Below, piece after piece: positions 5,723-59,067 of a stretch of 64,000 bases of DNA. The DNA is taken from the NCBI GenBank assembly GCA_964057225.1, contig OZ059898.1, positions 13,578,001 through 13,642,000 on the forward strand, given 5' to 3'. The translations under genes and the position numbers were made by a program. How positions within the stretch are numbered: the first letter of the stretch is position 1; each line of letters opens with the position of its first letter. The stretch is from Auanema rhodensis. Its lineage: Eukaryota > Animalia > Nematoda. Below the pieces are notes generated by a model. The model searched no databases and was not told the DNA's origin. It was given only the letters and a program-made list of their open reading frames with translations.

Positions 5723-7134
5723 ATGGCTCTTGAAGCATTCAAAAGACCAGCAGCTCCAGAGTATGCTCTTGGTTTGTATCGTTTTTAAAGCACTTTATAA
5801 CTATTGTCTTTAGCTAAGCGAAGTAAATTTGAGGACTATGGAACTGAAAATGCCAGACTATCTAATCTTCAGGTTTGAAACAGAAGGAAGTCAAAGAGAG
5901 TGAATATATTTATGTCTTAGGCTCCCATAATGCTTTTACAAGGACATCAGGGTGAAATTTATACTTCACGCTTCAGTCCCGATAGAACCTGTATAGCATC
6001 TGCTGGATTCGACCAAACCGTAAGCATAAAATGAATTATTTGTTTGACTGTTTTTAGGTATTTTTATGGAATGTTTATGGAGATTGTGAAAACTTCTCTA
6101 CGTTTAGAGGTCATAATGGCGCTGTTATGGATTTAAACTTTAACACTGATTCAAGGTTTGAATGTAAATATAGTTTTGTCTTCAAATACAGATTTCAGTT
6201 TGTTATTCACTTGTGGTACTGACAAAACTTTACGGGTATGGGATATGGAAACAGGAGCGTGCCAAAGACGGTTTAAATCACACGACGATATTGTCAACTC
6301 TTGTCACCCAGCTCGTAGAGGACCAACTTTAGTTTGTTCAGCTAGTGATGATGGAACAGTCAAAGTTTTTTTTGCTTATCGTACTCATTTTCAAACTGTT
6401 TCTCTCAGATTCATGATGTTCGTCAAAAACACGCTATTAAAAATTATGAAAATAAATTCCAACAAACTGCTGTATCTTTCAATGACACAACTGAACTAGT
6501 ATTTTGTGCTGGGATTGATAACGATATTAAAGTGCTATTGGACATTTTACAATTTGTTAGTTATTTCTTTATCTGCAGGTATGGGATATGAGACGGGATG
6601 ACATATCTTATGTTTTACGTGGACATGGCGACACCGTTACTGGAATGTCTCTTAGTCCTAATGGAAATTTCCTTTTAACCAATTCTATGGATTGCTCATG
6701 TAAGTTTATAAAGCAGATGTTGTTATTCAATTTCATTGATCAGTGAAACAATGGGATGTTCGTCCATTCGTACAAGGAACCAACCGCTTAGTTCAAACTT
6801 TCTACGCTCATCAACATAACTTCGAAAAAGTTAGAATGTTATAATAAGTGCTGAATATTTTGCATACATTTTAGAATTTGCTCAAGTGTGCATGGTCTCC
6901 TGACAATAGACGTGTTTCTGCTGGATCCAGTGATAGATTTGTTTATGTTTGGGAAGTATCAAACAAAAAAATAATGTATAAGCTTCCTGGTCACATGGGT
7001 TCAGTCAATGCTACAGATTTCCACCCTACAGAAAATATTTGTAAGTTATAAATCATATTGAAATTACAAAATATAATATTTCAGTGTTATCCGCATCGAG
7101 CGATAAGATGATCTATCTCGGAGAAATAGCTTGA
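5723..7134 (+). CDS. SNRNP40: U5 snRNP 40 kDa WD40 protein (SNRNP40)
   Basis: SNLQAPIMLLQGHQGEIYTSRFSP, FLWNVYGDCENFSTFRGHNGAV, DKTLRVWDMETG, HNFEKNLLKCAWSPD, YKLPGHMGSVN, SASSDKMIYLGEIA*. Confidence 0.93.
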
Positions 7135-9383: not shown

Positions 9384-11327
9384 ATGTTGAATATCAAACG
9401 CTTATATCAACATGGTTGATTTCAATCCATTTCAAAATATATATATTCTTATTCGGAAATAAAAATATGAATAAAGTGAAGTTAAAATGAATGTTTTTAT
9501 ACCTAGCCAGTTTGTACAAATATTAAAAATAACTGTTTTGTAGGGTTTATGGTACCTCCTCCCCCCCCCCCCTACATAACACTGTAGAACCGTTCATCAA
9601 GTTCATGCGAACTTTACGTGCAACTTGCTGAATCATGATTCAAATCTTTTAGTGGTTGCATTTTGCAAACTCTTCGTTTCGCACCTCTTATTTTAAGAAA
9701 GAAATTAATCGGGCTGACGCTGATGAGCAAAATCGTAAGTTAGATGGAGGAAAGCGACCTCAATCTTGATACTTAAGAAAACAAATAACCCCTTAATGTC
9801 AAATAGATATAAGACCTGCAGACAGATAGCGCGAAGTATAACAGTGATGAAGAAAGGGTCGATCGCCTGCTCACGTTCTAGGTCAGTCAATTCATTCGTG
9901 AAACTTGGCTAAGCTCCTACTTTTATAGTATCCGACAAATGTAGTAATTTCCACAAGCAGGTACTTTGTATTTATCTCAGAACATTGCTATTATCTTATT
10001 ATTCATGATGATGTACTTATGTTCATTCTCAGATTATATGCCATGGGGACCACAAGTAATGACGCAATGAACAATTTTGTAGACTGACCCCCTGTATGGA
10101 TCTTAGCCCCTCATTTTTTTGTTCTCATTGACAAGCCAAGATAGTTGCAATCTGCTGGCCTTCTATTGTTAATGACCTATCATTCAACGGCAAGAATCTC
10201 CATATGGTAAAATATAAAAACTTCCATCTCTTAAACTGACTGTTTCTTGCGCATATATTCTTTCTCCTCCTTTCTCAAATCAGCCGCCTACCATTATAAG
10301 TGCAAATTCAACATTTCCGTATTCTTTGCTATATAGCCTCGGAGCATATCACCCCCAGCACATATATCACCACCTAAGAGCATATCCCGACAAATTGGTT
10401 GAGCTCACGTAATGAATGTGCCCGAGCCGACAGTTGTTTTTTGAACTATATTTTCCCGCCACAGTTACGACCTATTAGACAATGTCGTCATCACGGGTCA
10501 GAGTTGAAGGAGGTGGAGTAGGTCGCACCCCTTATTCCCGGCACATGTTAGTTGGCGTTCTTTGGTTCTTCTTGGTAACAGTCCTGTGCACTTGTTTTCA
10601 GCGTCGTTTAGCATCTCAATACAAAAATATGAAAATAACTTATGTACCTCAAAGATAAACAATATCCCAATATTTTTGCATAATGTGTGCCACTTGCGTA
10701 GATCGTGCCATGACGTCATAATACTGTAGTCTGCTCTATTATTTCGTAATTAATATAGTCAGTTCTTGTATGTTATTGGCTTGCTATGTTTTTCGGTTTT
10801 CTTTTATAGTTTTAAAAGAAACTTAAAACTTTATCATTTGGAACTGTAGGTTTCTGTACTGTTGTGACATCTCCTTGATTTTCTTCTGAGTCATAGTGTG
10901 TCTATTCATATCAATTCTATTATGTTTTATTCATAGCTTTTTTTCGAATTGTAATTGTGGTATGGTAGAACGAACGATATTCAACGGGCAAAAACATCAA
11001 GTCATATCAATGTTCTTCCATTTCCTTTTTTACTTTTTAAGCCATCTGCTTCGTATTCCCCATTTCTCTCTATTATGCTATCATATTATGTGTGTACTTC
11101 TAAATTAAGACAATGGATTCTGAGTTCGTTGAAGTGCTCACGAATTGTTTTGCCAATTGTGGTTTGATTCTTATTCTGTGTTCTAGCATTTATTGTATTT
11201 GCTTGTCTCGGGTCATCGCCTATCTGTTGGCATAGACCTGTGTACTTATATCTTTGTCTTGAAAGAAACTTGGGTTATCTTCCTTATATATTCTCATTTT
11301 AGTGTTGCTCCTTTTTGGTAGGCAACA

Positions 11328-16953: not shown

Positions 16954-17948
16954 TTAGTGACAGGCGTCAGCAGCGAAACTGTCCGCTGCTTCATCAAATG
17001 AACTGTTCAGCTTGAGTACAGCAAATATCCAATGACCAAAGCCAGCGCCGAGGATTACAGCAGCAGCTATAGAAATAGTGTAAGATGGAGCGGAGTGAGA
17101 GAAAAAAAAGAAACTTACTTAGATAGTTGTTGTAGGTCATAACAATAAGCATCAACCAGTATGCTAGAATAAGTTGGGTGATATAGAGGAAAGCTTCAAT
17201 GAGACGATCGAGTGAAAATGCGTCAGAAGCAGTGAAAGGACTAAAAGACCGTTTTTAATAAAATAAGGAAAAAAACATTTTGAATACCTAGAACGATTTA
17301 CAGTCAGCCGTCGAGATGGTGGTGTAGTGGTTGGATTGTAAACATCTTCCTGAGAACAATGATTGTGTTGTAGGGGAGCCTATATAAAATGGTGAGATAC
17401 AATGTATAAAGCAAAAAGTACCTTTTCAACTTCGGAAAGTAGTACAGCATTCTGCTTGGGAATCTTAGCTTGAGCAGATTGCTTCATCTGCAGATACACT
17501 CTAAACCATTTCAACCCTTCATAAGCAGCCCCCATAATAAATATAGCAATGCATGACCAGAGCATTCCTAAATTAGCTTTTCCATATATATATATGACGT
17601 ATAAATGTATTATACCTATCCAAGTCTCTGTCCTCCAGAAATCAAAAAGAATCACTTCTTCAAATCCTCCGTGGAACCACATTTTCATCATATGGCCAGC
17701 ATGAGCGTCATGTCCAGCGTGAGCGTCATGTCCTGCATGAGCACTATGATCCATAGCATCTATAAAGGTGTTATCGTAAAAATAAAGAGAAAGATATAAA
17801 ATAACATACGATTATGATGAGCATGAGCATCGTGGCCCGATAAAATAGGATTAGAATCTGTCAATGAATCTAAGAAAGCGTCGACAGAAGCCGAAATGTT
17901 ATTTGGATCAACAGATGCATGATGTCCATGATGCTGGCTATGATCCAT
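16954..17948 (-). CDS. Ctr/SLC31 copper transporter with His-rich N-terminus
   Basis: MDHSQHHGHH...GHDAHAGHDAHAGHMMKMWFHGGFEEVILFDFW, AAYEGLKWFR, YWLMLIVMTYN (MxxxM copper gate), GAGFGHWIF (GxxxG), C-terminal DACH*. Confidence 0.92.
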
Positions 17949-23100: not shown

Positions 23101-25766
23101 AACTTGTTGTTGCCATTCAGGTATTTTAAATATAATTATATATATACGATTTATTTCAGTGGTTTGTTATGGATTTTGAACAAAGATTTGCTACAATGCT
23201 TTTGAGTATTACTGAGTCGCTAAAGATTGATTTGCGAGAAAAAGGCATATTGCCCCCACAAAAAATGGCTTTTGTGAGATATAGTGCAATGGAAGACGTT
23301 ATGCCTGAAGATTTTAACTTTACTAATGATCCAGATGGCAGAAAATTCAATGATAATTATATGCTTAGGTTGGTTCTATCCTTTTAAAACCTCATGTGTA
23401 TATTTCAGGGATCGATGCCTCAAGCAGATCGCCTATCTTGAGGCAAAAAATTTCCATGAGCCACTCGAGAAAATTTGGCTATCTTTGTTACGTTTAGCTG
23501 TTGATCCATCACTAAGGGTATATTGAATTACATTTTAATATTTTTATGGTTTTCTGTAGGTGGCCAATATGGCTCAAGTATTAGTTAGAAAAATAGAAAG
23601 TGCTGCTGTAGAAAAAAGCAACAAAGTTAATACTCACGCTACGAAAATTATTTGGAAAAGTGAGAATGATCATCCGACATCGTCATCTCTAGAGCAAAAA
23701 AGTAGATTGATACTGTTGTTTTTTATTTTATAACATTCGTTGTTGAAGATGTTGTTTTCGAAGTTGGAAGTCCAACTGCTAGTGCCTTGAAAGATACATG
23801 TGATACTCCTTTAGCTCCTACACAAAGAAAATTGTCTGCTGCAGGAACTCCCAAACACAAACGTAGGCTTTTAAAATCTGTGAATTACTTGTTTTTTTTC
23901 TTTAGCAAGAATTGGTAAAGAAGACTTGCTCAGTTTAGTTCGCCCTAATCAAAGTTTTACCCCTAAGCGTGTCACGGTAGTTTTTAAATTAAATATTCAA
24001 AACCGTTTTCTCTTTCAGACGGGAAGGTTAGATTGGACGGCTCATGATAAAAAAATACCATGTAATCAAGATCCCGTTGTGCAATCTGATTTTGTTGATT
24101 GGTGCAGTCGCGTTTTTGTTGAACCTATACTCGACTTCGTTCAAGTTTGTACATAAAATAACTAAAAGTAATGTAAAATTATTTTTCAGTCCAACGAAAG
24201 TGAAGATCACGAAGCTTATCGTTTACTTATACGTGTGAATCCCACCGATTGGGCTTATCATACTAGAGAAGGATTGGAACAAGTTGCGGCGGAAGAATTT
24301 AAAAAGCCTGGCGTAAGTTTATTGTGGTTCAGCAAGCAACATCTAAAAATAAGAAAAAAAATAGAAAAATATGTTATTATTTATTACAAAATGCAAACTC
24401 GACTGAGTGCGCCAGTATTTTTCATAAAAATAATTTATTAACAAGATTTGCACGGCTCAATTATTGCAGGAAAATTTATTCTAATATTCAATGTTCACTC
24501 ATATTTCAAAAATCATAATTTTAATTTTCAGCCTTGTGAAACATCCTTGGGCACTATTCATATAAAGGGTATAAAACAGCTTGCTCTTTCCTCTTTGCGA
24601 AAGATTATTTACTGTTCGGATGGAAAAAATGTCTCGTTAGCTCGTTATGATGGCTCTAACGTTTCTGTAATAAGGAAATTCGCTTTCGACGGAGGCAACA
24701 TGTTTGGAAGAGTATGAACCACAAAAATTTGAAGTAGTTTCTACATTTTTTTAAGGATACGATCACATCGTTACATGTAATAAATGATATGTCTCGGGAA
24801 ATGCTACTTTGTGGCTCTGACCGCGGTGTCTTGAGGGTACTTTTTTATGAAGTCTGTATCAGATAGTATAGTTCTTTTTTAGATTTGGGGTCCTCAATTT
24901 AATATTCATTCACACGAGTTAGAAACTGAACCACAATTTGTGACGTCGAGTCCCATTTTGAAAGATCAGGTTAGGAATAAGGTAGAGAAATCGAAAGGCT
25001 TCTTCTGCAGATATGAGTAAGAACTTTTTTTAAAATTCTTTTATTTTTCAAATTATCTTTAGCTGGTGTCAAGAACAAGGCAGAGTATTTGCTAGTGGAA
25101 ATATGAAAATAGTCCGAGTTTGGGATGCTCAATATGAGAGAACAACCCAAGATATTGTCGTAGATTCGAAATGCGGCTCAGTCAGAGCATTGAGTGCTCT
25201 TAGCTCTCAAGAACACACTGATTTGGTTTCTGTAGGATTCTCCAAGGGTACTGTAGACGTACATGATCTAAGAATTCCATCAAGATCTTCGCGTATTATG
25301 CGCTACGGAGATGGTACAAGCCCAGTAGTTCATTGTTCTTTGCGAATGGAAAATGATAAGGGGTCCTCCCGTTGTTTAATGTTCTCTGCCTCCGAAAGCG
25401 GAGAAATTGGAATTTTTGATCCTCGAATGTTCCAAGAACCAATTGATGAAATGCGCATTGAAACTGAGACGGCTCTTAATGTAGATGTACATCAAAATGC
25501 TCAAATGTTTGGGGTTGTGTGTAAAGATGAAGAAAATCGTACAGATGCACGTCTTTATGATATTAGAGGAAACAATATGGGTAATATCAACTCATATCCA
25601 CCAAATACTATGTTCACAAATGCATCGGTTATGGCATTTCATAAAATGAGGTAAAGTCACTCTAAAGATGTGAACATCGATAACCTTTTCACCTTTCAGA
25701 TGTCTAGTAGCTATTGCTGATGAAAACACTGTTACTTTATATGGTAAGAAGGCTATGAAAATATAA
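20126..25766 (+). CDS. daf-15: Raptor (TORC1 regulatory subunit), many short introns
   Basis: [107 protein letters not shown] region and C-terminal WD40 repeats; stop TAA 25764-25766. Confidence 0.95.
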
Positions 25767-39247: not shown

Positions 39248-40576
39248 GCTAATGTTTCTATACATTTCATAGGTTTCTAAATAATTTTATATAATTCATA
39301 TTATATTATATATATATATATATCGTATAGTACATATGATATACATATTTATGTTTTTTTTTGTTTGTTTGGAGCAGGAGGTGAATGAGAGTTTCTCTTT
39401 CTTTTTATTTTAACTTTACAACAATAATAATAACAACAACTTAATAACATTTCATTTTCATGTTACATGTTTCATGATATCATACTACTTGTGTTTGTTG
39501 TTATTTTTGCTCAGAACTTGAATCTCATAAACTCTTCATACCTGTCTTCCTCCTTCTCCTACTCCTTCTCCTTCTCCATTTCATAAGTATACTATCCTCT
39601 TTATACTTTTCACTCATTCATACCTTGCCTTACTCCCATTCCCCTCTCACTCCCCAAGTGTTTCTTTCTCTCATCATATTTTATTTTTGTTCAGAAAACC
39701 ACCTAAAATCAGGAACATTTCTCTTCTCAAAATATAAATATCAAATTAAATTTTAACTAAAACATAAATTACTAAGTCTAATTAAAAAAATATTTATATT
39801 TACACATTTCACATGCTCTAACCTTTTTTGAGAGAAACATTTCAATAAACAAAATGTTTTTTTTTGAAGATCTTATCTCAAATCCATTTTTAACATAATT
39901 TTCTTTTTACTTTTGTATAATTTCGAAGATCGGAAATTATGATTTGAAAAGATTTTCGATTAAAAATATTCTTAATTCATGAGAGGCTACGGACGAGAAG
40001 AAGGAGGATGGGAGCTCGATTTCGTGGTAAGAAATGAAAAAGAGAGAGAGAGAGATGTTGCATCTCCCCTTCTCTCATCTCTTACTGTAAACCCTGAGTC
40101 ATTTTTTCTGGTCTTCTTATGAATAATTCGGTTTTTTTATTTGAAATATCCTGCTTGATCTCTGATGTTTGTGATTGGTTTTAATATAATGGGTGAAACG
40201 TTGAACACAGCGAAATAGAACAATTTTAGGAAAAACTCTTTTTTTTTCTTTTTTTTTCTCTCTTCTTTTTTTTGAAAAGCTTGTTCATTCAAAGAAAAAC
40301 GTCATAACTAAATAAAGAAATTTTTATTATATTATCAATGTATTTCATTCATAAAATCACAAGAAAAATATGAAATGAGAATATAAACAATGTATTTGTT
40401 GTTCTAAAATTTTTCAAAAAAATAAAAATAAATATACACGTAATTGAAATGATTATGATCGTTATGATGTTCTTTCAATATACATAATATTAGTAATAGT
40501 TAATTTATAATATTATTATTAATTATTATTATCAATTATTATTTCCATATGTACATATATTTAGATTCGATTTCAT

Positions 40577-43500
40577 TCAAATTACTGGATTTGATATCAA
40601 TGGTGGTTCTTCTTCATTCGTATATTTACTTTTATTTGAAGCAAATGATATGGATCGAGCTTTGCGTGGAACTTCACGAGGACACGTCCAGTCGTATTGA
40701 GATTGCGAACGGAAAGTCTGAAAATATTTAGTTAAATCATACTTTTTTTTAATTTAATTGGTGCCTAAAGAAAATAGTCAAAGAATTAACCTTCTTATTA
40801 GCTTCGACAGCAGCACATAGCGTTCCATTTCGCATTTCACTCAAGACCAGGTTAAATGCTCTTGTTAGCATATCATTAATCTCATATGGTGTACATCCAT
40901 GTGATTTAAATCCTTGATCTCTAAAATACTATATATGTTAACTATATCATATAAATAATATATAAATATATGTAAATGATAATTTTATATGAAAAATGAA
41001 ATCCGATATATAAACATATCGGAAATGAAAATTCAACCGTTCAATTGCATATCATCTCATATAATTGATTATGTGACGTGTATCAGACATCACGTGAATG
41101 ATTTCCGTCATATAATTCCGGACGTGAAAATAAATCGTATATATGCTAATTTAAGAATAAATTAAAAACAATAACTTGCCTGAGGGTATATTTAACGATA
41201 GTAGACACTACACGGCTTCTTATATCTTTCCACTGTTCAACAGTAAAATGAACATTCGAATAGAAATTTGCTTCTCCCATCCTTCGTCCCATTTCACGAA
41301 TATTATCTCCTCGACCTTTGTTGGATATCCTGAGGTAATCTTGTTAAGAATTACTAAGTCAGAAAATGCGATGTGTGTGTGTGCATGTGAGAGAGAGAGA
41401 GAGAGGGAGAGAGACAGAAAGACAGAGAAAGAGAGAGGAGGAAATGAAAATGATACTAACCATCTAAGCACTTGTTCGATAAATAATCCAACACGTTCTC
41501 CTGTATTTTTCACACTTTGATGATCTTCATACTGCTGCTCATAATTTGAATTACCAACAATAGCAGCAGCTAGTTGTTTATATTCTTCACAGAGCTATAA
41601 AAATATAAATTTTCAAATAAAATCAAAAAATTTATAAAACTTACAGTTAAAATGATATCTATGCCTAACGAAGTCTTTATCGGTGCAATGCTTTTGAGTA
41701 CAAAATCAGCAACTCGTGGCCGTATAAATAAATTTTTTGACGTTGTAACCGTAACACTCTTCAAACTTTGTCGTTGCTGTAACAATGATGATAATGAGCG
41801 ATAATCTCTGATTTGCATAAATTTGTTGTTTTCATGGCATATTCAGTTTGAAAAATAATTAAAACCTTATTAAAACTTGGCCAATGATAAAAGAGCAGCC
41901 AATTAGTTGTACTATGAATGACGAGTAAAAGATTTGAAGCATCAGTTAAATAGTATGTATTCATGAAGCGATCAATATCACCATCAGCTGGATCTCTAGA
42001 AATTATAATAAATTAATATAATTATATTATTTACATGTTTGTTTATTTCTTATTTTTTTGTTTTTCAATAAGAAATGTAGCTGTCAAGAAAAGAAGCCAA
42101 AAATGATGAATATTATGAATGAAATAGTATAAAACAACTTACTCTACGCTTTCACCATAACCAAGTAATTCAAGTAATAATGTATTAAACATGTATAACA
42201 TATTACATAAAATGAATTTAAAGTTTAAAAGCTGAAAATATGAGGAAATAACCATTATACAAGCAACTTGTATAGAAAATTTATATTATTTTAAAACTTA
42301 CAGACAACCGAAGTGGAATATTTCGTTTCATATGAGCATTTATGTGCAAATTTCCAACTGTTCGTTGATTACAAACCTTAAATTTGATTTTTCAATAATT
42401 TTTGAAACAGCACAAGTTGTTTTAAGTTTTTAAGAATCAAACTTACAATAATAGTTTTTATTGTAAGAACTGTTAACACAATAATTGGAAGAGGAGCTCG
42501 AAATATGATATCAGGTAGGAAGTGAACAACTAAAATATTGTATCATTCTTCATGGAAAAATGTTTATTAAGAGGTACAAACCGAATTTGTATTGACGTGA
42601 TGAAGTGCTGTTGTATGGCTTGAGAAGGGTTGATAGCCGATAACGAGATTGTTTGGTCGGCTTAATTTCAAAACAGGGAACTAGAAATCTTTCGAATGGA
42701 ATTGGTAATAAGTTTAAAATAGATGCTCCAATGATGATGCAAGCACATATCCAAAAAACTCCGAATTTCGCTTTTCGTGTACGTTGTTCCAGAGGCTTCG
42801 TAACTGCCCAGTATCTGGAGCAATGAATAGATTATCCAAATTAAGGCAGTAACTCAGAAATGCTGCTGCTTGCAAGACGAGTTTGATTGAATAATGTGAA
42901 AACGTACCTTTCAACAGTGATGGCTAGAACTTGCCAGATTGTGCAGGACACGCAGAATGATGCAAAAGGTTGTAAGATGAATAAAACATAAGCCATAGTA
43001 CCATATGTAGGTGGCATTCCATAAATAAACGATGGAATACCGTATGTAGCTATAAGTTGATTTCGTATTTGAATATTGAATCTCTGAGATTATTTGACTA
43101 CCTAAGCATGATAGAAGATATAATGAATCCCAGATGCATATCATTCCAAGATGAACTGCTAATCGTTTTGAGAAAACACGTGAGCCATAGATCTGAAGAA
43201 TAATTGGCTTTGTTTCGTAAATGAGGAGGAGGAGTAGGAGGACAAATATGATGAATGAAGATGAAGCTATTGAACAATCAAAACGAAGATTTACCTGTAT
43301 GAGCAGTAGAATACTACCTGTTAAGCCTAATGTAACAAGTGTCATGGTTATTACTCCATTATAACGATAACTATAAATGAATTGATTACTCATTTAAGAT
43401 ACATTAGAGAGACAGATATGACGAATTCAGAAAACAAACCTGAAATTCTTGTATTCCTTGAAACTCTTAGCCATTGGAACAGCTAAGTGACCAGCTGAAC

Positions 43501-43585
43501 TTGAATAGTAAACTTCAATATCAAAGCACCAGTCCATTTCAGGGAATTCGACCTTTGGATATTCAGTGGCATTTTCGATCACCAT
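40577..43585 (-). CDS. Chimeric peptide-receptor-like 7TM GPCR plus C-terminal globin-fold domain (GLB-33-like architecture)
   Basis: ATG 43585 after a TTGCAG acceptor. TM1 GVITMTLVTLGLTGSILLL, TM2 HLGMICIWDSLYLL, TM3 CTIWQVLAITVERYWAVTKPL, TM5 DIIFRAPLPIIVLTVLT, TM7 DASNLLLVIHSTTNWLLFY. These are followed in frame by a ~150 aa helical globin-like domain and a tail ending NPVI* (TGA 40577-40579). Confidence 0.82.
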
Positions 43586-44399
43586 TGTGGTGACAACTGC
43601 AAGAAGAAAATACGAATAAAAATTAATGAAAAACAGAAGAAAATAACCGAAGACCAGATAAAATTAAGAATCAAGCAAAAGAGAAGAAGGAGAAGAAGAA
43701 GAAGAAAGAGGGGAGGAGGAGGTGAGAGAAAATATAAAATGAAAAAACAATAGTATGAGATGATATATATATAATACAATGCTAAGAAGATAATGAGGAA
43801 AATGAATGTGAGGAGAAAATAAGATTTTTTTGTGAAAAAAAAAAACTAAAATTTCGAGATATGATGCAATAAATTTAATAAGAAATATGATGATGTGTTA
43901 AACTTTTTTAAAAACTTTTTTTAGCTGAGAAATTGAAATATGATAGTATATGCTCACACATATCGAATATGGATAGTGTACTTCAGATGATATATTTAAA
44001 AATTCACGAAGAAGTATCGAAGATTAACAAACAGAATAGATAAAAGGAAATGTCGGAAACCATCGAAATCGTCTAGAGCTTGAAGAAGCTGAAGTTAAAT
44101 GATTATGAAAAGCAAACTCCATTGTTGCAGACATTCAACGTCACAGATTTGCTTGAAAACTGAGCGAGCGTGAGAACGTGAGCTTTCATGAGCAAAGAAG
44201 AGTAGGAGAGAATCGGTTTGTGTGTGAGTTTGCATATAAAGGATTTTCTTCACTGTGTTATTTTTCAATGAAATCAACCTTGTGAGGTCTGAAAGCACAG
44301 AATGATAAGCTCCTCCTCCCTAATTTTCGTTTGCTGAGTTCAAAGCATAGAAGGGAGAAGCATAGAGTACAGTGACAACTAGAGAAAGAGAAAGCGACG

Positions 44400-44457
44400 A
44401 AGAGAGAGAAAGAGAGAGAAAGAGAGAGAAAGAGAGAGAAAGAGAGAGAAAGAGAAA
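44400..44457. repeat. 10-bp tandem repeat (AGAGAGAGAA)x5
   Basis: Five exact consecutive copies at 44401-44450. Confidence 0.95.
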
Positions 44458-44870
44458 GTAAGAATGATAGACAGAGAGAAATAGACAGAAACGAGAGAAC
44501 TAAGAGATTCGATGAAATAGAAGATGAAGAAGAAGACCTCTAGCTATATCTTGACTTCTAAAAGTCAGAACTTCAACTTGAAATAAAATAAAAAATTTCA
44601 AAAGCAATTTCATTTCATATCTCTTCTATCAGTTCAAAACTAGTAGTCACCTGTCATTGTTAGGAATTCAACAAAATTTAAAAATAAAATAATATATCCA
44701 TATGAAATTTAATGTACCTATACTATAAATAATATGCAATAGTTGGTGCTTGTTCTCTTTACTGGCAACTAAAAATATCCAAATGGGTATTTAAGAACTT
44801 TATTTTCTGAATGAAAATTTGATAAAGTTTTAAAATATTAAAATTAACTATATAGCATATGTTTAAATAT

Positions 44871-57657: not shown

Positions 57658-59067
57658 TTAAATATTATTTGATGAACTTTGACTTGGTACGACAACATTT
57701 TCCCGTATCTCTGTTAGTTTACGACTTCCTCCTTTAACTTGTGGTTTTTCAATATGTAAATCAAAATATGATTTAAGTCCTTTAAAGTATTCATCTTGTT
57801 CCAAATTATTATTCCTTACATCAATTCTTTTATATTTTTTAATTTGATATCTTATTATTAATGGACAAAGAAATGAATAAATTTGTACCTATAATTCATT
57901 ATAATAAATAATTAAAAAAAAGAACAAAATTCTTACCATACTTACAATCTCAAATGACATTGCAAATGATTTTGAATCAACATTTGGATCAAACTGTAAT
58001 AAATCAAAAGAATAAGTTGAAAGATACAAAAATTAAAATTAAAAATCAGCAAATAACTCTTTAAGTTTTGAAAACTTACATGAAGATATAGACTGAGAAC
58101 AATAATAATATTAAGAAGAATAACAAAATGTAGAAAACATATTGGTAAGAAGCGTACAATAGCCAACTTGTTTTCACCAACCTTATATGAAATGGATATT
58201 CTTTTATTAAAAAATATATATGTATATACCATACCTGATACTTGTTACCCAGATTAACAACACGGTTTTTGAACATTTTTTCATCATATAACGTTTTACA
58301 TAAAGTTAATATAAATATTATTATTGATGTAATTTGCACTATGAACATTGAATATATTAATATTTTGAACTAAAATTATAGTTTGATTATAAAAATCTTT
58401 TTAAATTTTGATTAATAACATACTGATGGACGTTCAGATGCATCAGGTACTAACACAGTTATCAGAGATAACTTGTCTTCAGGCTCTTCTGCTCGAAAAA
58501 TTACCAGTAATTGCAAAAAAGCAAGAGAAAAAAAAATCTGTAAATTCCAGCTTAACTCAAGACTTGATCTCTGTTGTAATAACTTTAAATAGAATTGATA
58601 AAATGTCTAAGATTGACATGCTGAAAATGCCGAATATATAATAGAAAACATACAGAAAATAGAACTGAGACATATCCCAAATATGGTTTCGATATAGTTT
58701 CATATTTTCGAGGAAAAGACGTCGATATGGCACGTTCCATACATATGCCAAACATCGAAATAACTTGACTATTCATAGCTAAACTATATGGCATACGTAA
58801 GTAAAAAGCTGTTTTAGATAACATTGCATAATTACATGGATTTTCATGATATTGCAAAGCTCTGAAAAGAGAAAGAAAGAGAGAACGATAGACGGAGAGA
58901 GCAGGGAAAAAGAAAATAATACCTATGAAGTTCATATGAGTATATAGGTATCTGTGTTAAAGACAAGAAGATGTTGCACACCAAATGAAAATGAAATACT
59001 ACACGGCAATTAGAGTTAGCTAACCATTGTGTTTTCTGAAAAAAATAGTTAAAATTCCTTCTATTTT

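What the first reader, a model, noticed from the sequence alone, without database searches (positions are those of the whole stretch)
40577..43585. GPCR-globin chimera: 7TM peptide-receptor-like protein fused to an intracellular globin-fold domain
Seen: the minus-strand exons splice into one open frame. After TM7 the protein continues IRPRVADFVLKSIAPIKTSLGIDIILT|LCEEYKQLAAAIVGNSNYEQQYEDHQSVKNTGERVGLFIEQVLR|WISNKGRGDNIREMGRRMGEANFYSNVHFTVEQWKDIRSRVVSTIVKYTLR|DQGFKSHGCTPYEINDMLTRAFNLVLSEMRNG. The ORF track misses this domain because it is split over short exons. Inference: length and pattern fit nematode globin helices A-H: B-helix Gly, E helix ...F-I-E-Q-V-L, F helix IRExxRxxGxx[H], G helix F-x-x-E-x-W, H helix F-x-x-V-x-x-EMRxG. 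Knowledge: C. elegans GLB-33 is the known FMRFamide-receptor-like 7TM + globin chimera. This gene is either a divergent GLB-33 orthologue or a second, poorly described lineage of globin-coupled receptors, which could link gas/redox or lipid sensing to G-protein signalling.
Basis: partly seen in the sequence, partly recalled or inferred. Interest (0 to 1): 0.85.

Follow-up and report, generated by a model that had tools for sequence, protein, structure and literature searches.

The report
Receptor gene with haem-less globin tail
A nematode (Auanema) cell-surface receptor gene does carry a globin-shaped domain on its intracellular tail, but it matches the uncharacterised C. elegans gene C39B10.1 rather than GLB-33, and it lacks the histidine that normally holds the haem, so it is probably not a classical gas sensor.

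Summary
Window 43585-40577 (minus strand) splices into one 14-exon, 583-aa frame, exactly as quoted. It encodes a rhodopsin-type 7TM receptor, a roughly 25-aa linker, a roughly 165-aa domain and a 46-aa tail.

The nearest relative is Auanema sp. JU1783 (89% identical). It has the same 14 exons, and dN/dS is about 0.03.

The tail domain is a globin. The AlphaFold model of the JU1783 tail (pLDDT 90) matches only globins (Z up to 15.2). Pfam Globin passes its cut-off in the Toxocara and Dracunculus orthologues.

The gene is not glb-33. Its C. elegans orthologue is C39B10.1 (583 aa, chromosome X), whereas GLB-33 is Y75B7AL.1 (542 aa). The family is single-copy across Chromadorea.

Plectus, ascarids and some others keep His at E7 and F8. 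Here F8 is Asn, E7 is Thr and CD1 is Val. The F8 His was lost at least six times on the family tree, while the G/H surface stays invariant.

My reading is a second, old lineage of receptor-globin chimeras, represented here by a probably haem-free form.

The GLB-33 sequence could not be compared.

The scan holds an unchecked note (s1-401414) of a separate glb-33 candidate elsewhere in this genome.

The parts
40577..43585 (-). Whole coding region: 14 exons, 583 codons plus TGA. Orthologue of C. elegans C39B10.1.
   Evidence: Splicing script. 89% identity to Auanema sp. JU1783 protein P0001. Same exon structure in L002. Tree.
41866..43585 (-). Exons 1-9: N-terminal ectodomain with the conserved DWCFD motif, plus seven TM segments (about aa 55-73, 85-103, 124-150, 170-188, 230-259, 283-306, 325-348).
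   Evidence: Hydropathy. Pfam 7tm_1 scores 31.3 bits (cut-off 30.5) and Srw 23.0 (cut-off 22.2) on P0001, which is 98.5% identical here. Weak class A GPCR hits in PDB.
42811..42912 (-). E151-R152-Y153, the E/DRY motif at the end of TM3. The Arg codon is split by intron 4.
   Evidence: Codon map. E149/R150 are invariant in alignment A1.
41887..41904 (-). N343-W-L-L-F-Y348: the TM7 motif in place of NPxxY, with Pro replaced by Trp.
   Evidence: N341/W342/F345 are invariant in A1.
41726..41776 (-). Ser/Thr-rich linker (aa 356-372) between TM7 and the globin A helix.
   Evidence: The helix starts in the model of the JU1783 tail.
40791..41725 (-). Globin-fold domain, aa 373-537, spread over exons 10-13 (helices A-B, C, E, F, G and a long H).
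   Evidence: AF2 model of the 78%-identical JU1783 tail has pLDDT 90.2. All top hits are globins by Foldseek and by VIA, Z 15.2. Language-model neighbours are all nematode globins. Pfam Globin passes cut-off in orthologues.
41266..41268 (-). Codon AAT = Asn465 at globin position F8, where haem-binding globins have the proximal His.
   Evidence: It lies in the G-x-x-H motif column (RRMGEAN here, RRIGFAH in Ascaris, RRVGAVH in GLB-33). The spacing F8 to G-helix Trp is 12, as in GLB-33.
41502..41504 (-). Codon ACA = Thr430 at distal position E7. This is His in Plectus, ascarids, Dracunculus and Bursaphelenchus.
   Evidence: Toxocara tail versus human beta-globin alignment places its His on beta His63. 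Site table.
41248..41250 (-). His471 in the FG corner, a second His that is conserved in many orthologues.
   Evidence: It lies in the loop between helices F and G of the model.
40806..40853 (-). Invariant or near-invariant H-helix residues N517, E522, C529, A530 and V532 (the SGALCAxVE motif). With W477/K478/R481 on helix G, they are conserved whatever the F8 state.
   Evidence: Alignment A2 invariant columns. Codon map.
41174..41179 (-). GC donor (GCAAGT) of intron 12.
   Evidence: The orthologous donor in JU1783 is GTATGT at the same codon position.
40577..40717 (-). Exon 14: 46-aa C-terminal tail with a conserved basic/Ser motif (PRKxRSxSF, 40643-40669), followed by TGA.

Best explanation
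This is the Auanema orthologue of C. elegans C39B10.1. It is a class A (rhodopsin-type) seven-transmembrane receptor whose cytoplasmic C-terminus is a full 3-on-3 globin-fold domain, tethered about 25 residues after TM7. The family is a single-copy lineage found across chromadorean nematodes and is separate from GLB-33. Its ancestral tail had the normal haem ligands (His E7, His F8). In the branch leading to Auanema, strongylids and Caenorhabditis the proximal His was lost. In this gene F8 is Asn, E7 is Thr and CD1 is Val, so the domain most likely no longer holds haem in the canonical way. The domain is still under strong purifying selection, and its invariant residues lie on helices G and H rather than in the haem pocket. 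I therefore infer that it now works as a haem-independent regulatory module. It may dock on the receptor's intracellular face or on a partner (G protein, arrestin or a second protomer) through the G/H surface. Shown: gene structure, orthology, fold, residue states and selective constraint. Inferred: loss of haem binding and the regulatory role.
For: Gene model and conservation: (dN/dS 0.010 for the 7TM part, 0.055 for the tail). Orthology: the best relatives are C39B10.1-type proteins in more than 35 nematodes. The gene tree follows the species tree, with the window sister to JU1783 at 100/100 and inside a clade with strongylids and Caenorhabditis C39B10.1 at 97/94. Synteny with JU1783 is conserved, with Srab receptors upstream and Raptor-type WD40 exons downstream. 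GLB-33 is a different gene: Y75B7AL.1, 542 aa, C. briggsae CBG06424, with a P. pacificus orthologue of its own. C39B10.1 corresponds to CBG17255 and P. pacificus P0079. Globin fold: model pLDDT 90.2, pTM 0.85. The top 50 Foldseek hits are all globins, TM 0.44-0.76, mostly above 0.6. The top 44 VIA hits are all globins, with Z 15.2, rmsd 2.3 Å and 140 aligned residues against neuroglobin. The C. elegans tail behaves the same way, Z 14.5. Homology: Pfam Globin scores 24.7 and 23.7 bits against a cut-off of 22 in the Toxocara and Dracunculus tails. Toxocara tail versus beta-globin gives E = 2.2e-4. The family profile hits only globins among natural PDB proteins. Residue states and at least 6 His/non-His changes. 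The F8 column is fixed by the G-x-x-H motif and by the 12-residue spacing to the G-helix Trp, both shared with the 33 C. elegans globins. The invariant residues are on helices G and H.
Against: There is no RNA evidence from this genome. The window's own spliced protein could not be handed to the profile or fold tools, so fold evidence rests on the 78%-identical JU1783 tail and on the C. elegans tail. Pfam Globin does not reach any score on the Auanema or C. elegans tails themselves. The residue-level F8 assignment rests on motif, spacing and conservation, not on a 3D superposition. One profile-profile alignment to E. coli Hmp put F8 two residues later, but at 2.4% probability. His471 and Cys529 are conserved and could be alternative ligands. 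Haem binding was not and cannot be tested here. The regulatory mechanism is inference only.
Confidence: 0.8

Rival explanations
1. The domain is still a working haem sensor. Haem would be held by a non-canonical ligand (His471 in the FG corner, Cys529, or a water/Asn network), and the receptor would still couple gas or redox state to signalling.
For: The fold and a hydrophobic core are kept. His471 is conserved in many orthologues, including those that keep F8 His. Cys529 is nearly invariant. Several orthologues have Tyr at F8 with His at E7, and Tyr can ligate ferric haem (established from Hb M variants, from my own knowledge).
Against: F8, E7 and CD1 have all changed to residues that do not ligate or pack haem. 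The C-CD-E segment that forms the distal side is the fastest-evolving part of the protein, with 38% identity between two Auanema species against 98.5% in the 7TM part. The C. elegans orthologue has Ala at F8 and was not counted among the 33 globins. The authors of PMC2228317 excluded a C. elegans globin-like protein with F8 Asn (T19C4.5) from their globin set.
Confidence: 0.2
2. It is a divergent orthologue of GLB-33.
For: The architecture is the same. By eye, the E, F and early G helices resemble GLB-33 more than the other 32 C. elegans globins (RRVGAVHY against RRIGFAHY, and FT...WK).
Against: C. elegans, C. briggsae and P. pacificus each have both a GLB-33 gene and a separate C39B10.1-type gene. 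The window groups with C39B10.1 at 50% identity over the full length. No intron position in the globin part is shared with GLB-33: CD2.0, EF10.0 and FG7.0 there, against after B12, after E20 and late G here. An unchecked scan note reports a separate glb-33 candidate elsewhere in this genome.
Confidence: 0.03
3. These are two genes, or a mis-joined model: the receptor ends after TM7 and exons 10-14 belong to a separate globin-like transcript.
For: There are no reads from this genome. All database relatives are computational predictions, apart from the curated C. elegans model.
Against: The frame is open across every junction, and the same junctions are kept in JU1783 despite saturated silent divergence (dS about 2). 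There is no start codon or upstream stop pattern at exon 10. L003 and L004 carry the receptor and the tail in one uninterrupted ORF of 676 and 671 aa. More than 35 species show the same fusion.
Confidence: 0.04
4. The tail is a generic helical bundle that only resembles a globin by convergence.
For: Helical models often reach Z of about 13-14 by chance arrangements (tool note). The family profile also hit designed helical repeat proteins.
Against: Every one of the top 44 VIA hits and top 50 Foldseek hits is a globin covering the whole domain. Sequence-level significance to globins exists in the orthologues. The globin-specific motifs B6 Gly, C2 Pro, E8 Gly, F5 Gly-x-x-F8 and G5 Trp are in register. 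The designed-repeat hits are sums of many sub-threshold repeats, each with an individual E-value of 0.06 or worse.
Confidence: 0.03

Closest known systems
C. elegans C39B10.1 (NP_509754.1, UniProt Q18517), annotated only as a family-1 GPCR
   Same: Orthologue: 583 aa against 583 aa, about 50% identity over 95% of the length, the same 7TM plus linker plus globin-fold tail plus Ser-rich end, and the same invariant G/H-helix residues.
   Different: F8 is Ala and the F5 Gly is lost in Caenorhabditis, whereas here F8 is Asn with F5 Gly kept. I found no paper describing a globin domain or a function for it. Only a deletion allele, ok2789, is mentioned, among alleles excluded from a sleep screen.
C. 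elegans GLB-33 (Y75B7AL.1), the published GPCR-globin chimera
   Same: An N-terminal 7TM receptor and a C-terminal globin domain. The E/F/G helix motifs are similar by eye.
   Different: It is a separate gene lineage, present alongside C39B10.1-type genes in Caenorhabditis and Pristionchus. GLB-33 keeps F8 His and is listed as a true globin. Its intron positions differ. Whether the two lineages share one ancestral fusion was not testable, because the GLB-33 sequence was available only as text in a paper.
Ascaris suum FMRFamide-receptor-like globin chimera (Tilleman et al. 2015, as cited in PMC8076648)
   Same: Probably the same orthologous family. The Ascaris member found here (P0020, 596 aa) has the same architecture and keeps His at E7 and F8.
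   Different: That paper is said to model a 'shortened' globin fold. The JU1783 and C. elegans tails modelled here show all the main helices A-C and E-H. I could not read the paper, so I could not confirm that its protein is P0020.
Neuroglobin and other hexacoordinate animal globins
   Same: They are the best structural matches: mouse neuroglobin at Z 15.2, rmsd 2.3 Å, 140 of 147 residues. The His-retaining orthologues have the same His E7/His F8 pair.
   Different: Those are free-standing haem proteins. Here the domain is fused to a receptor and lacks both His residues.
Bacterial globin-coupled sensors (HemAT, DosC, AfGcHK, GsGCS)
   Same: A globin domain coupled to a signalling domain. Their globin domains match the model at Z 12-14.
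   Different: The domain order is reversed (globin first), the globin subfamily is different, all bind haem, and none is a 7TM G-protein-type receptor.
C. elegans T19C4.5, a globin-like protein with Asn at F8
   Same: A precedent in nematodes for a globin-like protein with F8 Asn.
   Different: It is not fused to a receptor. The authors of PMC2228317 excluded it from the globin set.

Membership tests
Globin superfamily (3-on-3 fold, Pfam PF00042) | 3-on-3 alpha-helical sandwich, helices A-H | tested here: met
   Models of the JU1783 tail (78% identical to the window's tail) and of the C. elegans tail have pLDDT 90 and 89. All top PDB matches are globins, with Z 15.2 and 14.5. The window's own spliced sequence could not be submitted.
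Globin superfamily (3-on-3 fold, Pfam PF00042) | Significant sequence match to the globin profile | tested here: inconclusive
   There is no Pfam hit on the window exons or on the Auanema and C. elegans tails. The orthologous Toxocara and Dracunculus tails pass the cut-off (24.7 and 23.7 against 22 bits), and Toxocara hits beta-globin at E = 2.2e-4. Membership therefore follows only through orthology.
Globin superfamily (3-on-3 fold, Pfam PF00042) | Proximal His at F8 | tested here: not met
   Asn465 (codon AAT, 41266-41268) sits in the G-x-x-H column.
Globin superfamily (3-on-3 fold, Pfam PF00042) | Phe at CD1 and His/Gln at E7 | tested here: not met
   CD1 is Val412 and E7 is Thr430. GLB-33 itself has Val at CD1 and Ile at E7, so these two positions are not strict requirements.
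Globin superfamily (3-on-3 fold, Pfam PF00042) | Binds haem | not testable with these tools
   This needs recombinant protein and spectroscopy.
GLB-33 orthologous group | The closest C. elegans and C. briggsae genes are Y75B7AL.1 and CBG06424 | tested here: not met
   The closest genes are C39B10.1 and CBG17255. GLB-33 identifiers come from PMC2228317.
GLB-33 orthologous group | Groups with GLB-33 sequences in a tree | not tested
   No GLB-33 sequence could be fetched by reference.
C39B10.1 orthologous group | Full-length collinear similarity and monophyly with C39B10.1 | tested here: met
   50% identity over 95% of the length. The clade with Caenorhabditis and strongylids has 97/94 support, and the gene tree follows the species tree.
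Class A (rhodopsin-type) GPCR | Seven TM segments and a match to Pfam 7tm_1 | tested here: met
   Seven hydrophobic segments. 7tm_1 scores 31.3 bits against a cut-off of 30.5 on P0001, which is 98.5% identical in this part. On a single window exon the match is only E = 0.083.
Class A (rhodopsin-type) GPCR | E/DRY at TM3 and NPxxY at TM7 | tested here: inconclusive
   ERY is present and invariant. NPxxY is replaced by NWLLFY across the family.
FMRFamide/neuropeptide receptor family | Specific similarity to known peptide receptors | tested here: inconclusive
   The Srw hit is just above cut-off (23.0 against 22.2). PDB hits are weak and mixed: 5-HT and dopamine at E = 6e-5 to 1e-3, and NPFF1, CCK-A and neuromedin-B receptors at E = 3e-3 to 7e-3.

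The most novel reading that the evidence does not exclude
C39B10.1-type receptors would be a second, ancient lineage of GPCR-globin chimeras, found across Chromadorea and overlooked because the globin is cryptic in C. elegans. In this lineage the haem ligands were discarded repeatedly, at least six times, while the fold and an invariant G/H-helix surface were kept. The globin domain would then have been re-used as a haem-independent signalling module attached to the receptor, and C. elegans would carry a 34th, haem-less globin fold.
Probability: 0.45. Interest if true: 0.7.

Novelty: new variant of a known kind. Interest (0 to 1): 0.6.

Why it matters
A 2026 review-level statement says that glb-33 is essentially the only globin-containing receptor chimera in animals (PMC13331133). 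The evidence here points to a second lineage that is older and more widespread: Plectus, ascarids, tylenchids, strongylids, Caenorhabditis and Auanema. It includes the uncharacterised C. elegans gene C39B10.1, for which a deletion allele exists.

The family offers a natural series. Some members keep both haem histidines, and others have lost them while the domain stays under constraint. That makes a long-standing question directly testable: what does a globin fold do on a receptor when it is not carrying haem? It also means that the Ascaris 'GLB-33-like' receptor in the literature may have been compared with the wrong C. elegans gene.

Tried and rejected
- **Pfam on single window exons** found nothing useful. 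The pieces of 27-77 aa are too short.
After that I sent none of those letters to any public search, pattern, paper or findings tool. All later references were to exons or database proteins. For transparency, one local script in the closed sandbox used the whole window file as a BLAST subject for my own protein model. It found no second copy of any exon.
- **The look-up of sequencing runs** found four runs of one study holding 34-46% of the words, with the kind only guessed as RNA. These results cannot be interpreted without laying the reads.
- **A word-indexed search with the JU1783 tail alone** found only the query itself.
- **Attempts to reach GLB-33** through a family profile, the C. elegans orthologue and the protein atlas never returned it. 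It was compared by eye only.
- **The family profile against PDB** gave top hits to designed helical repeat proteins. I reject these as additive sub-threshold repeat matches.
- **The Dracunculus tail alone against PDB** gave nothing significant.
- **hhalign of the family against the E. coli Hmp globin** was too weak (probability 2.4%) to fix the register.
- **Intron positions.** Intron 10 lies one nucleotide from the classical B12.2 globin intron. I give this little weight because nematode globin introns are highly variable.
- **The Tilleman 2015 paper** is not held in the library.
Full report
**Gene structure.** Reading the minus strand of 40000-44500 and splicing at the obvious sites gives 14 exons from the ATG at 43585 to the TGA ending at 40577. 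The product is 583 aa. Twelve introns are GT-AG, and intron 12 uses a GC donor (GCAAGT). Hydropathy shows seven membrane segments between residues 55 and 348. ERY sits at the end of TM3, and NWLLFY replaces NPxxY in TM7. A Ser/Thr-rich linker follows, then about 165 residues of predicted helices, then a 46-residue tail.

**Limits on evidence.** The spliced protein has no reference, so I did not paste it into any tool. Single exons gave nothing in Pfam. There is therefore no RNA evidence from this genome. I kept those letters out of all later public searches. One local sandbox BLAST used the window file as subject.

**Relatives.** A full HMMER scan with exon 5 (77 aa) found a 577-aa protein of Auanema sp. 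JU1783 at 99% identity, plus full-length relatives in Pristionchus, Ascaris, Steinernema, Meloidogyne and others. Profile and single-sequence searches extended the family to more than 35 nematodes, including Plectus, Toxocara, Dracunculus, strongylids and eight Caenorhabditis species.

The C. elegans member is C39B10.1 (583 aa, NP_509754.1, on the 17.7-Mb chromosome X record), and the C. briggsae member is CBG17255. GLB-33 is Y75B7AL.1, 542 aa, with C. briggsae orthologue CBG06424 (PMC2228317; PMC2576238). It also has its own P. pacificus orthologue. Caenorhabditis and Pristionchus therefore each have both genes.

A maximum-likelihood tree of 38 family members follows the nematode species tree. 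The window is sister to JU1783 (100/100) and lies inside a clade with strongylids and Caenorhabditis C39B10.1 (97/94). The gene is a C39B10.1 orthologue, not a glb-33 orthologue.

**Is the model real?** The JU1783 locus (L002) splices into its database protein with the same 14 exons. Exons 2-10, 12 and 13 have identical lengths. It has a GT donor where the window has GC. The two proteins are 89% identical, with no gap at any junction. Silent sites are saturated (dS about 2), while dN/dS is 0.010 for the 7TM part, 0.055 for the tail domain and 0.031 overall.

Neighbours are partly shared, with Srab-type receptors upstream and Raptor-type WD40 exons downstream. Two assembly contigs from a Meloidogyne-like nematode hold the receptor and tail as one uninterrupted ORF of 676 and 671 aa. 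A mis-joined model is therefore unlikely.

**Is the tail a globin?**
- An alignment of 29 tails (A2) gave an AlphaFold model of the JU1783 tail with pLDDT 90.2 and pTM 0.85. It has helices at 3-31, 33-40, 50-71, 78-93, 99-119 and 130-161.
- The top 50 Foldseek hits in PDB are all globins, with TM up to 0.76 for C. elegans GLB-12.
- An exhaustive VIA alignment against 48,161 chains ranks 44 globins first. Mouse neuroglobin scores Z 15.2, rmsd 2.3 Å, with 140 of 147 residues aligned.
- The C. elegans tail gives the same result, with pLDDT 88.8 and Z 14.5.
- Language-model features put the tail among nematode globin clusters in 30 of 30 hits.
- At sequence level, Pfam Globin passes its cut-off in the Toxocara (24.7 bits) and Dracunculus (23.7 bits) tails. 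It is weaker in Ascaris and Pristionchus and absent in Auanema and Caenorhabditis.
- The Toxocara tail hits human beta-globin at E = 2.2e-4 through helices B to F, placing its His on beta His63 (E7).
- The family profile finds only globins among natural PDB proteins, at E = 0.02-2. The stronger hits to designed helical repeats are sums of sub-threshold repeats.

**Haem pocket.** In the published alignment of all 33 C. elegans globins, F8 His sits in a G-x-x-H motif. In GLB-33 it lies 12 residues before the G-helix Trp. The family has the same motif and the same spacing (RRIGFAHY in Ascaris, RRVGAVHY in GLB-33). The conserved stripe I79-C83-L86-H90 runs down one face of helix F.

In the window this column is Asn465 (AAT, 41266-41268). 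E7 is Thr430, CD1 is Val412 and the C2 Pro is Lys. This agrees with the scan's own note s1-419476.

His at both E7 and F8 is kept in both Plectus paralogues, Ascaris, Toxocara, Dracunculus, Enterobius, Bursaphelenchus and Aphelenchoides fujianensis. F8 is Tyr in strongylids and most tylenchids, Ala in Caenorhabditis, and Gln in Mesorhabditis belari and Steinernema glaseri. On the tree at least six His/non-His changes are needed. With Plectus as outgroup, these read as losses. One of them may be shared by Auanema, strongylids and Caenorhabditis.

Between the two Auanema species the C-CD-E segment is only 38% identical, against 98.5% in the 7TM part and 91.5% in helices E-H. The columns that never change (W/K/R at the start of G; N, E, C, A and V in H) are not pocket residues.

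**Mechanism.** The shown facts point to a receptor whose cytoplasmic globin domain was originally a haem sensor and is now, in this lineage, probably haem-free yet still needed. I infer a regulatory or docking role through the G/H surface. That surface is the dimer interface in bacterial globin-coupled sensors. From my own knowledge, a globin can also act on G-alpha, as reported for neuroglobin. This part is inference. Residual haem binding through His471 or Cys529 cannot be excluded.

**Relation to GLB-33.** By eye, the E, F and early G helices are closer to GLB-33 than to the other 32 C. elegans globins. However, no globin-domain intron position is shared. No GLB-33 sequence could be fetched for a test. 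Whether the two chimera lineages come from one fusion remains open.

**Literature.** The literature treats glb-33 as the only such chimera in animals and mentions an Ascaris counterpart with a 'shortened' globin. That counterpart is probably this family's Ascaris member, but I could not read the paper. The scan holds an unchecked note of a separate glb-33 candidate elsewhere in this genome.

Noticed in passing
window 41174-41179: Intron 12 uses a GC-AG splice (GCAAGT). The orthologous intron in Auanema sp. JU1783 has GTATGT at the same codon position.
   Followed up: yes
window 43597-43600; L002 about 9991-9995: A splice-acceptor-like TTGCAG lies 11 bases upstream of the start codon. A TGCAG lies 6 bases upstream in JU1783. 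The layout is typical of an SL trans-splice site.
   Followed up: partly
window 41645/41594 (intron 10): Intron 10 falls directly after globin codon B12, one nucleotide from the classical B12.2 globin intron. Nematode globin introns are very variable (PMC2576238), so this may be chance.
   Followed up: partly
window 40643-40669: A conserved basic/Ser motif (PRKxRSxSF) lies in the C-terminal tail. It is shared with strongylids and Caenorhabditis and looks like a basophilic kinase site.
   Followed up: no
window 41375-41445 and 44380-44470: There are (CT)n/(CA)n microsatellites in intron 11 and a long (TCTC)n run about 800 bases upstream of the gene.
   Followed up: no
Its message says the filter also trips by chance. 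I worked beside them and sent them to no public search tool.
   Followed up: no
window 58588-58935 (-), 17383-17754 (-), 25103-25651 (+), 6158-6496 (+): Neighbouring exons hit an Srab-type chemoreceptor (E = 4e-4, just under cut-off), a Ctr copper transporter, and WD40 beta-propellers (Raptor-like). Srab receptors and Raptor are also neighbours of the orthologue in JU1783 (L002).
   Followed up: partly
P0051:364-529 (C. elegans C39B10.1): The tail of this uncharacterised C. elegans receptor is predicted with high confidence to be a globin fold with Ala at F8. It would be a cryptic globin outside the published set of 33.
   Followed up: yes
L004 113-1120: The Logan contig that carries an intron-free orthologue also carries a DDE_3 transposase ORF just upstream. 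It is unclear whether the contig is genomic or a chimeric transcript.
   Followed up: no
P0082 and P0086 (Plectus sambesii): Plectus has two divergent copies of the family, and both keep His at E7 and F8. They join on long branches, so the timing of their duplication is unsure.
   Followed up: partly
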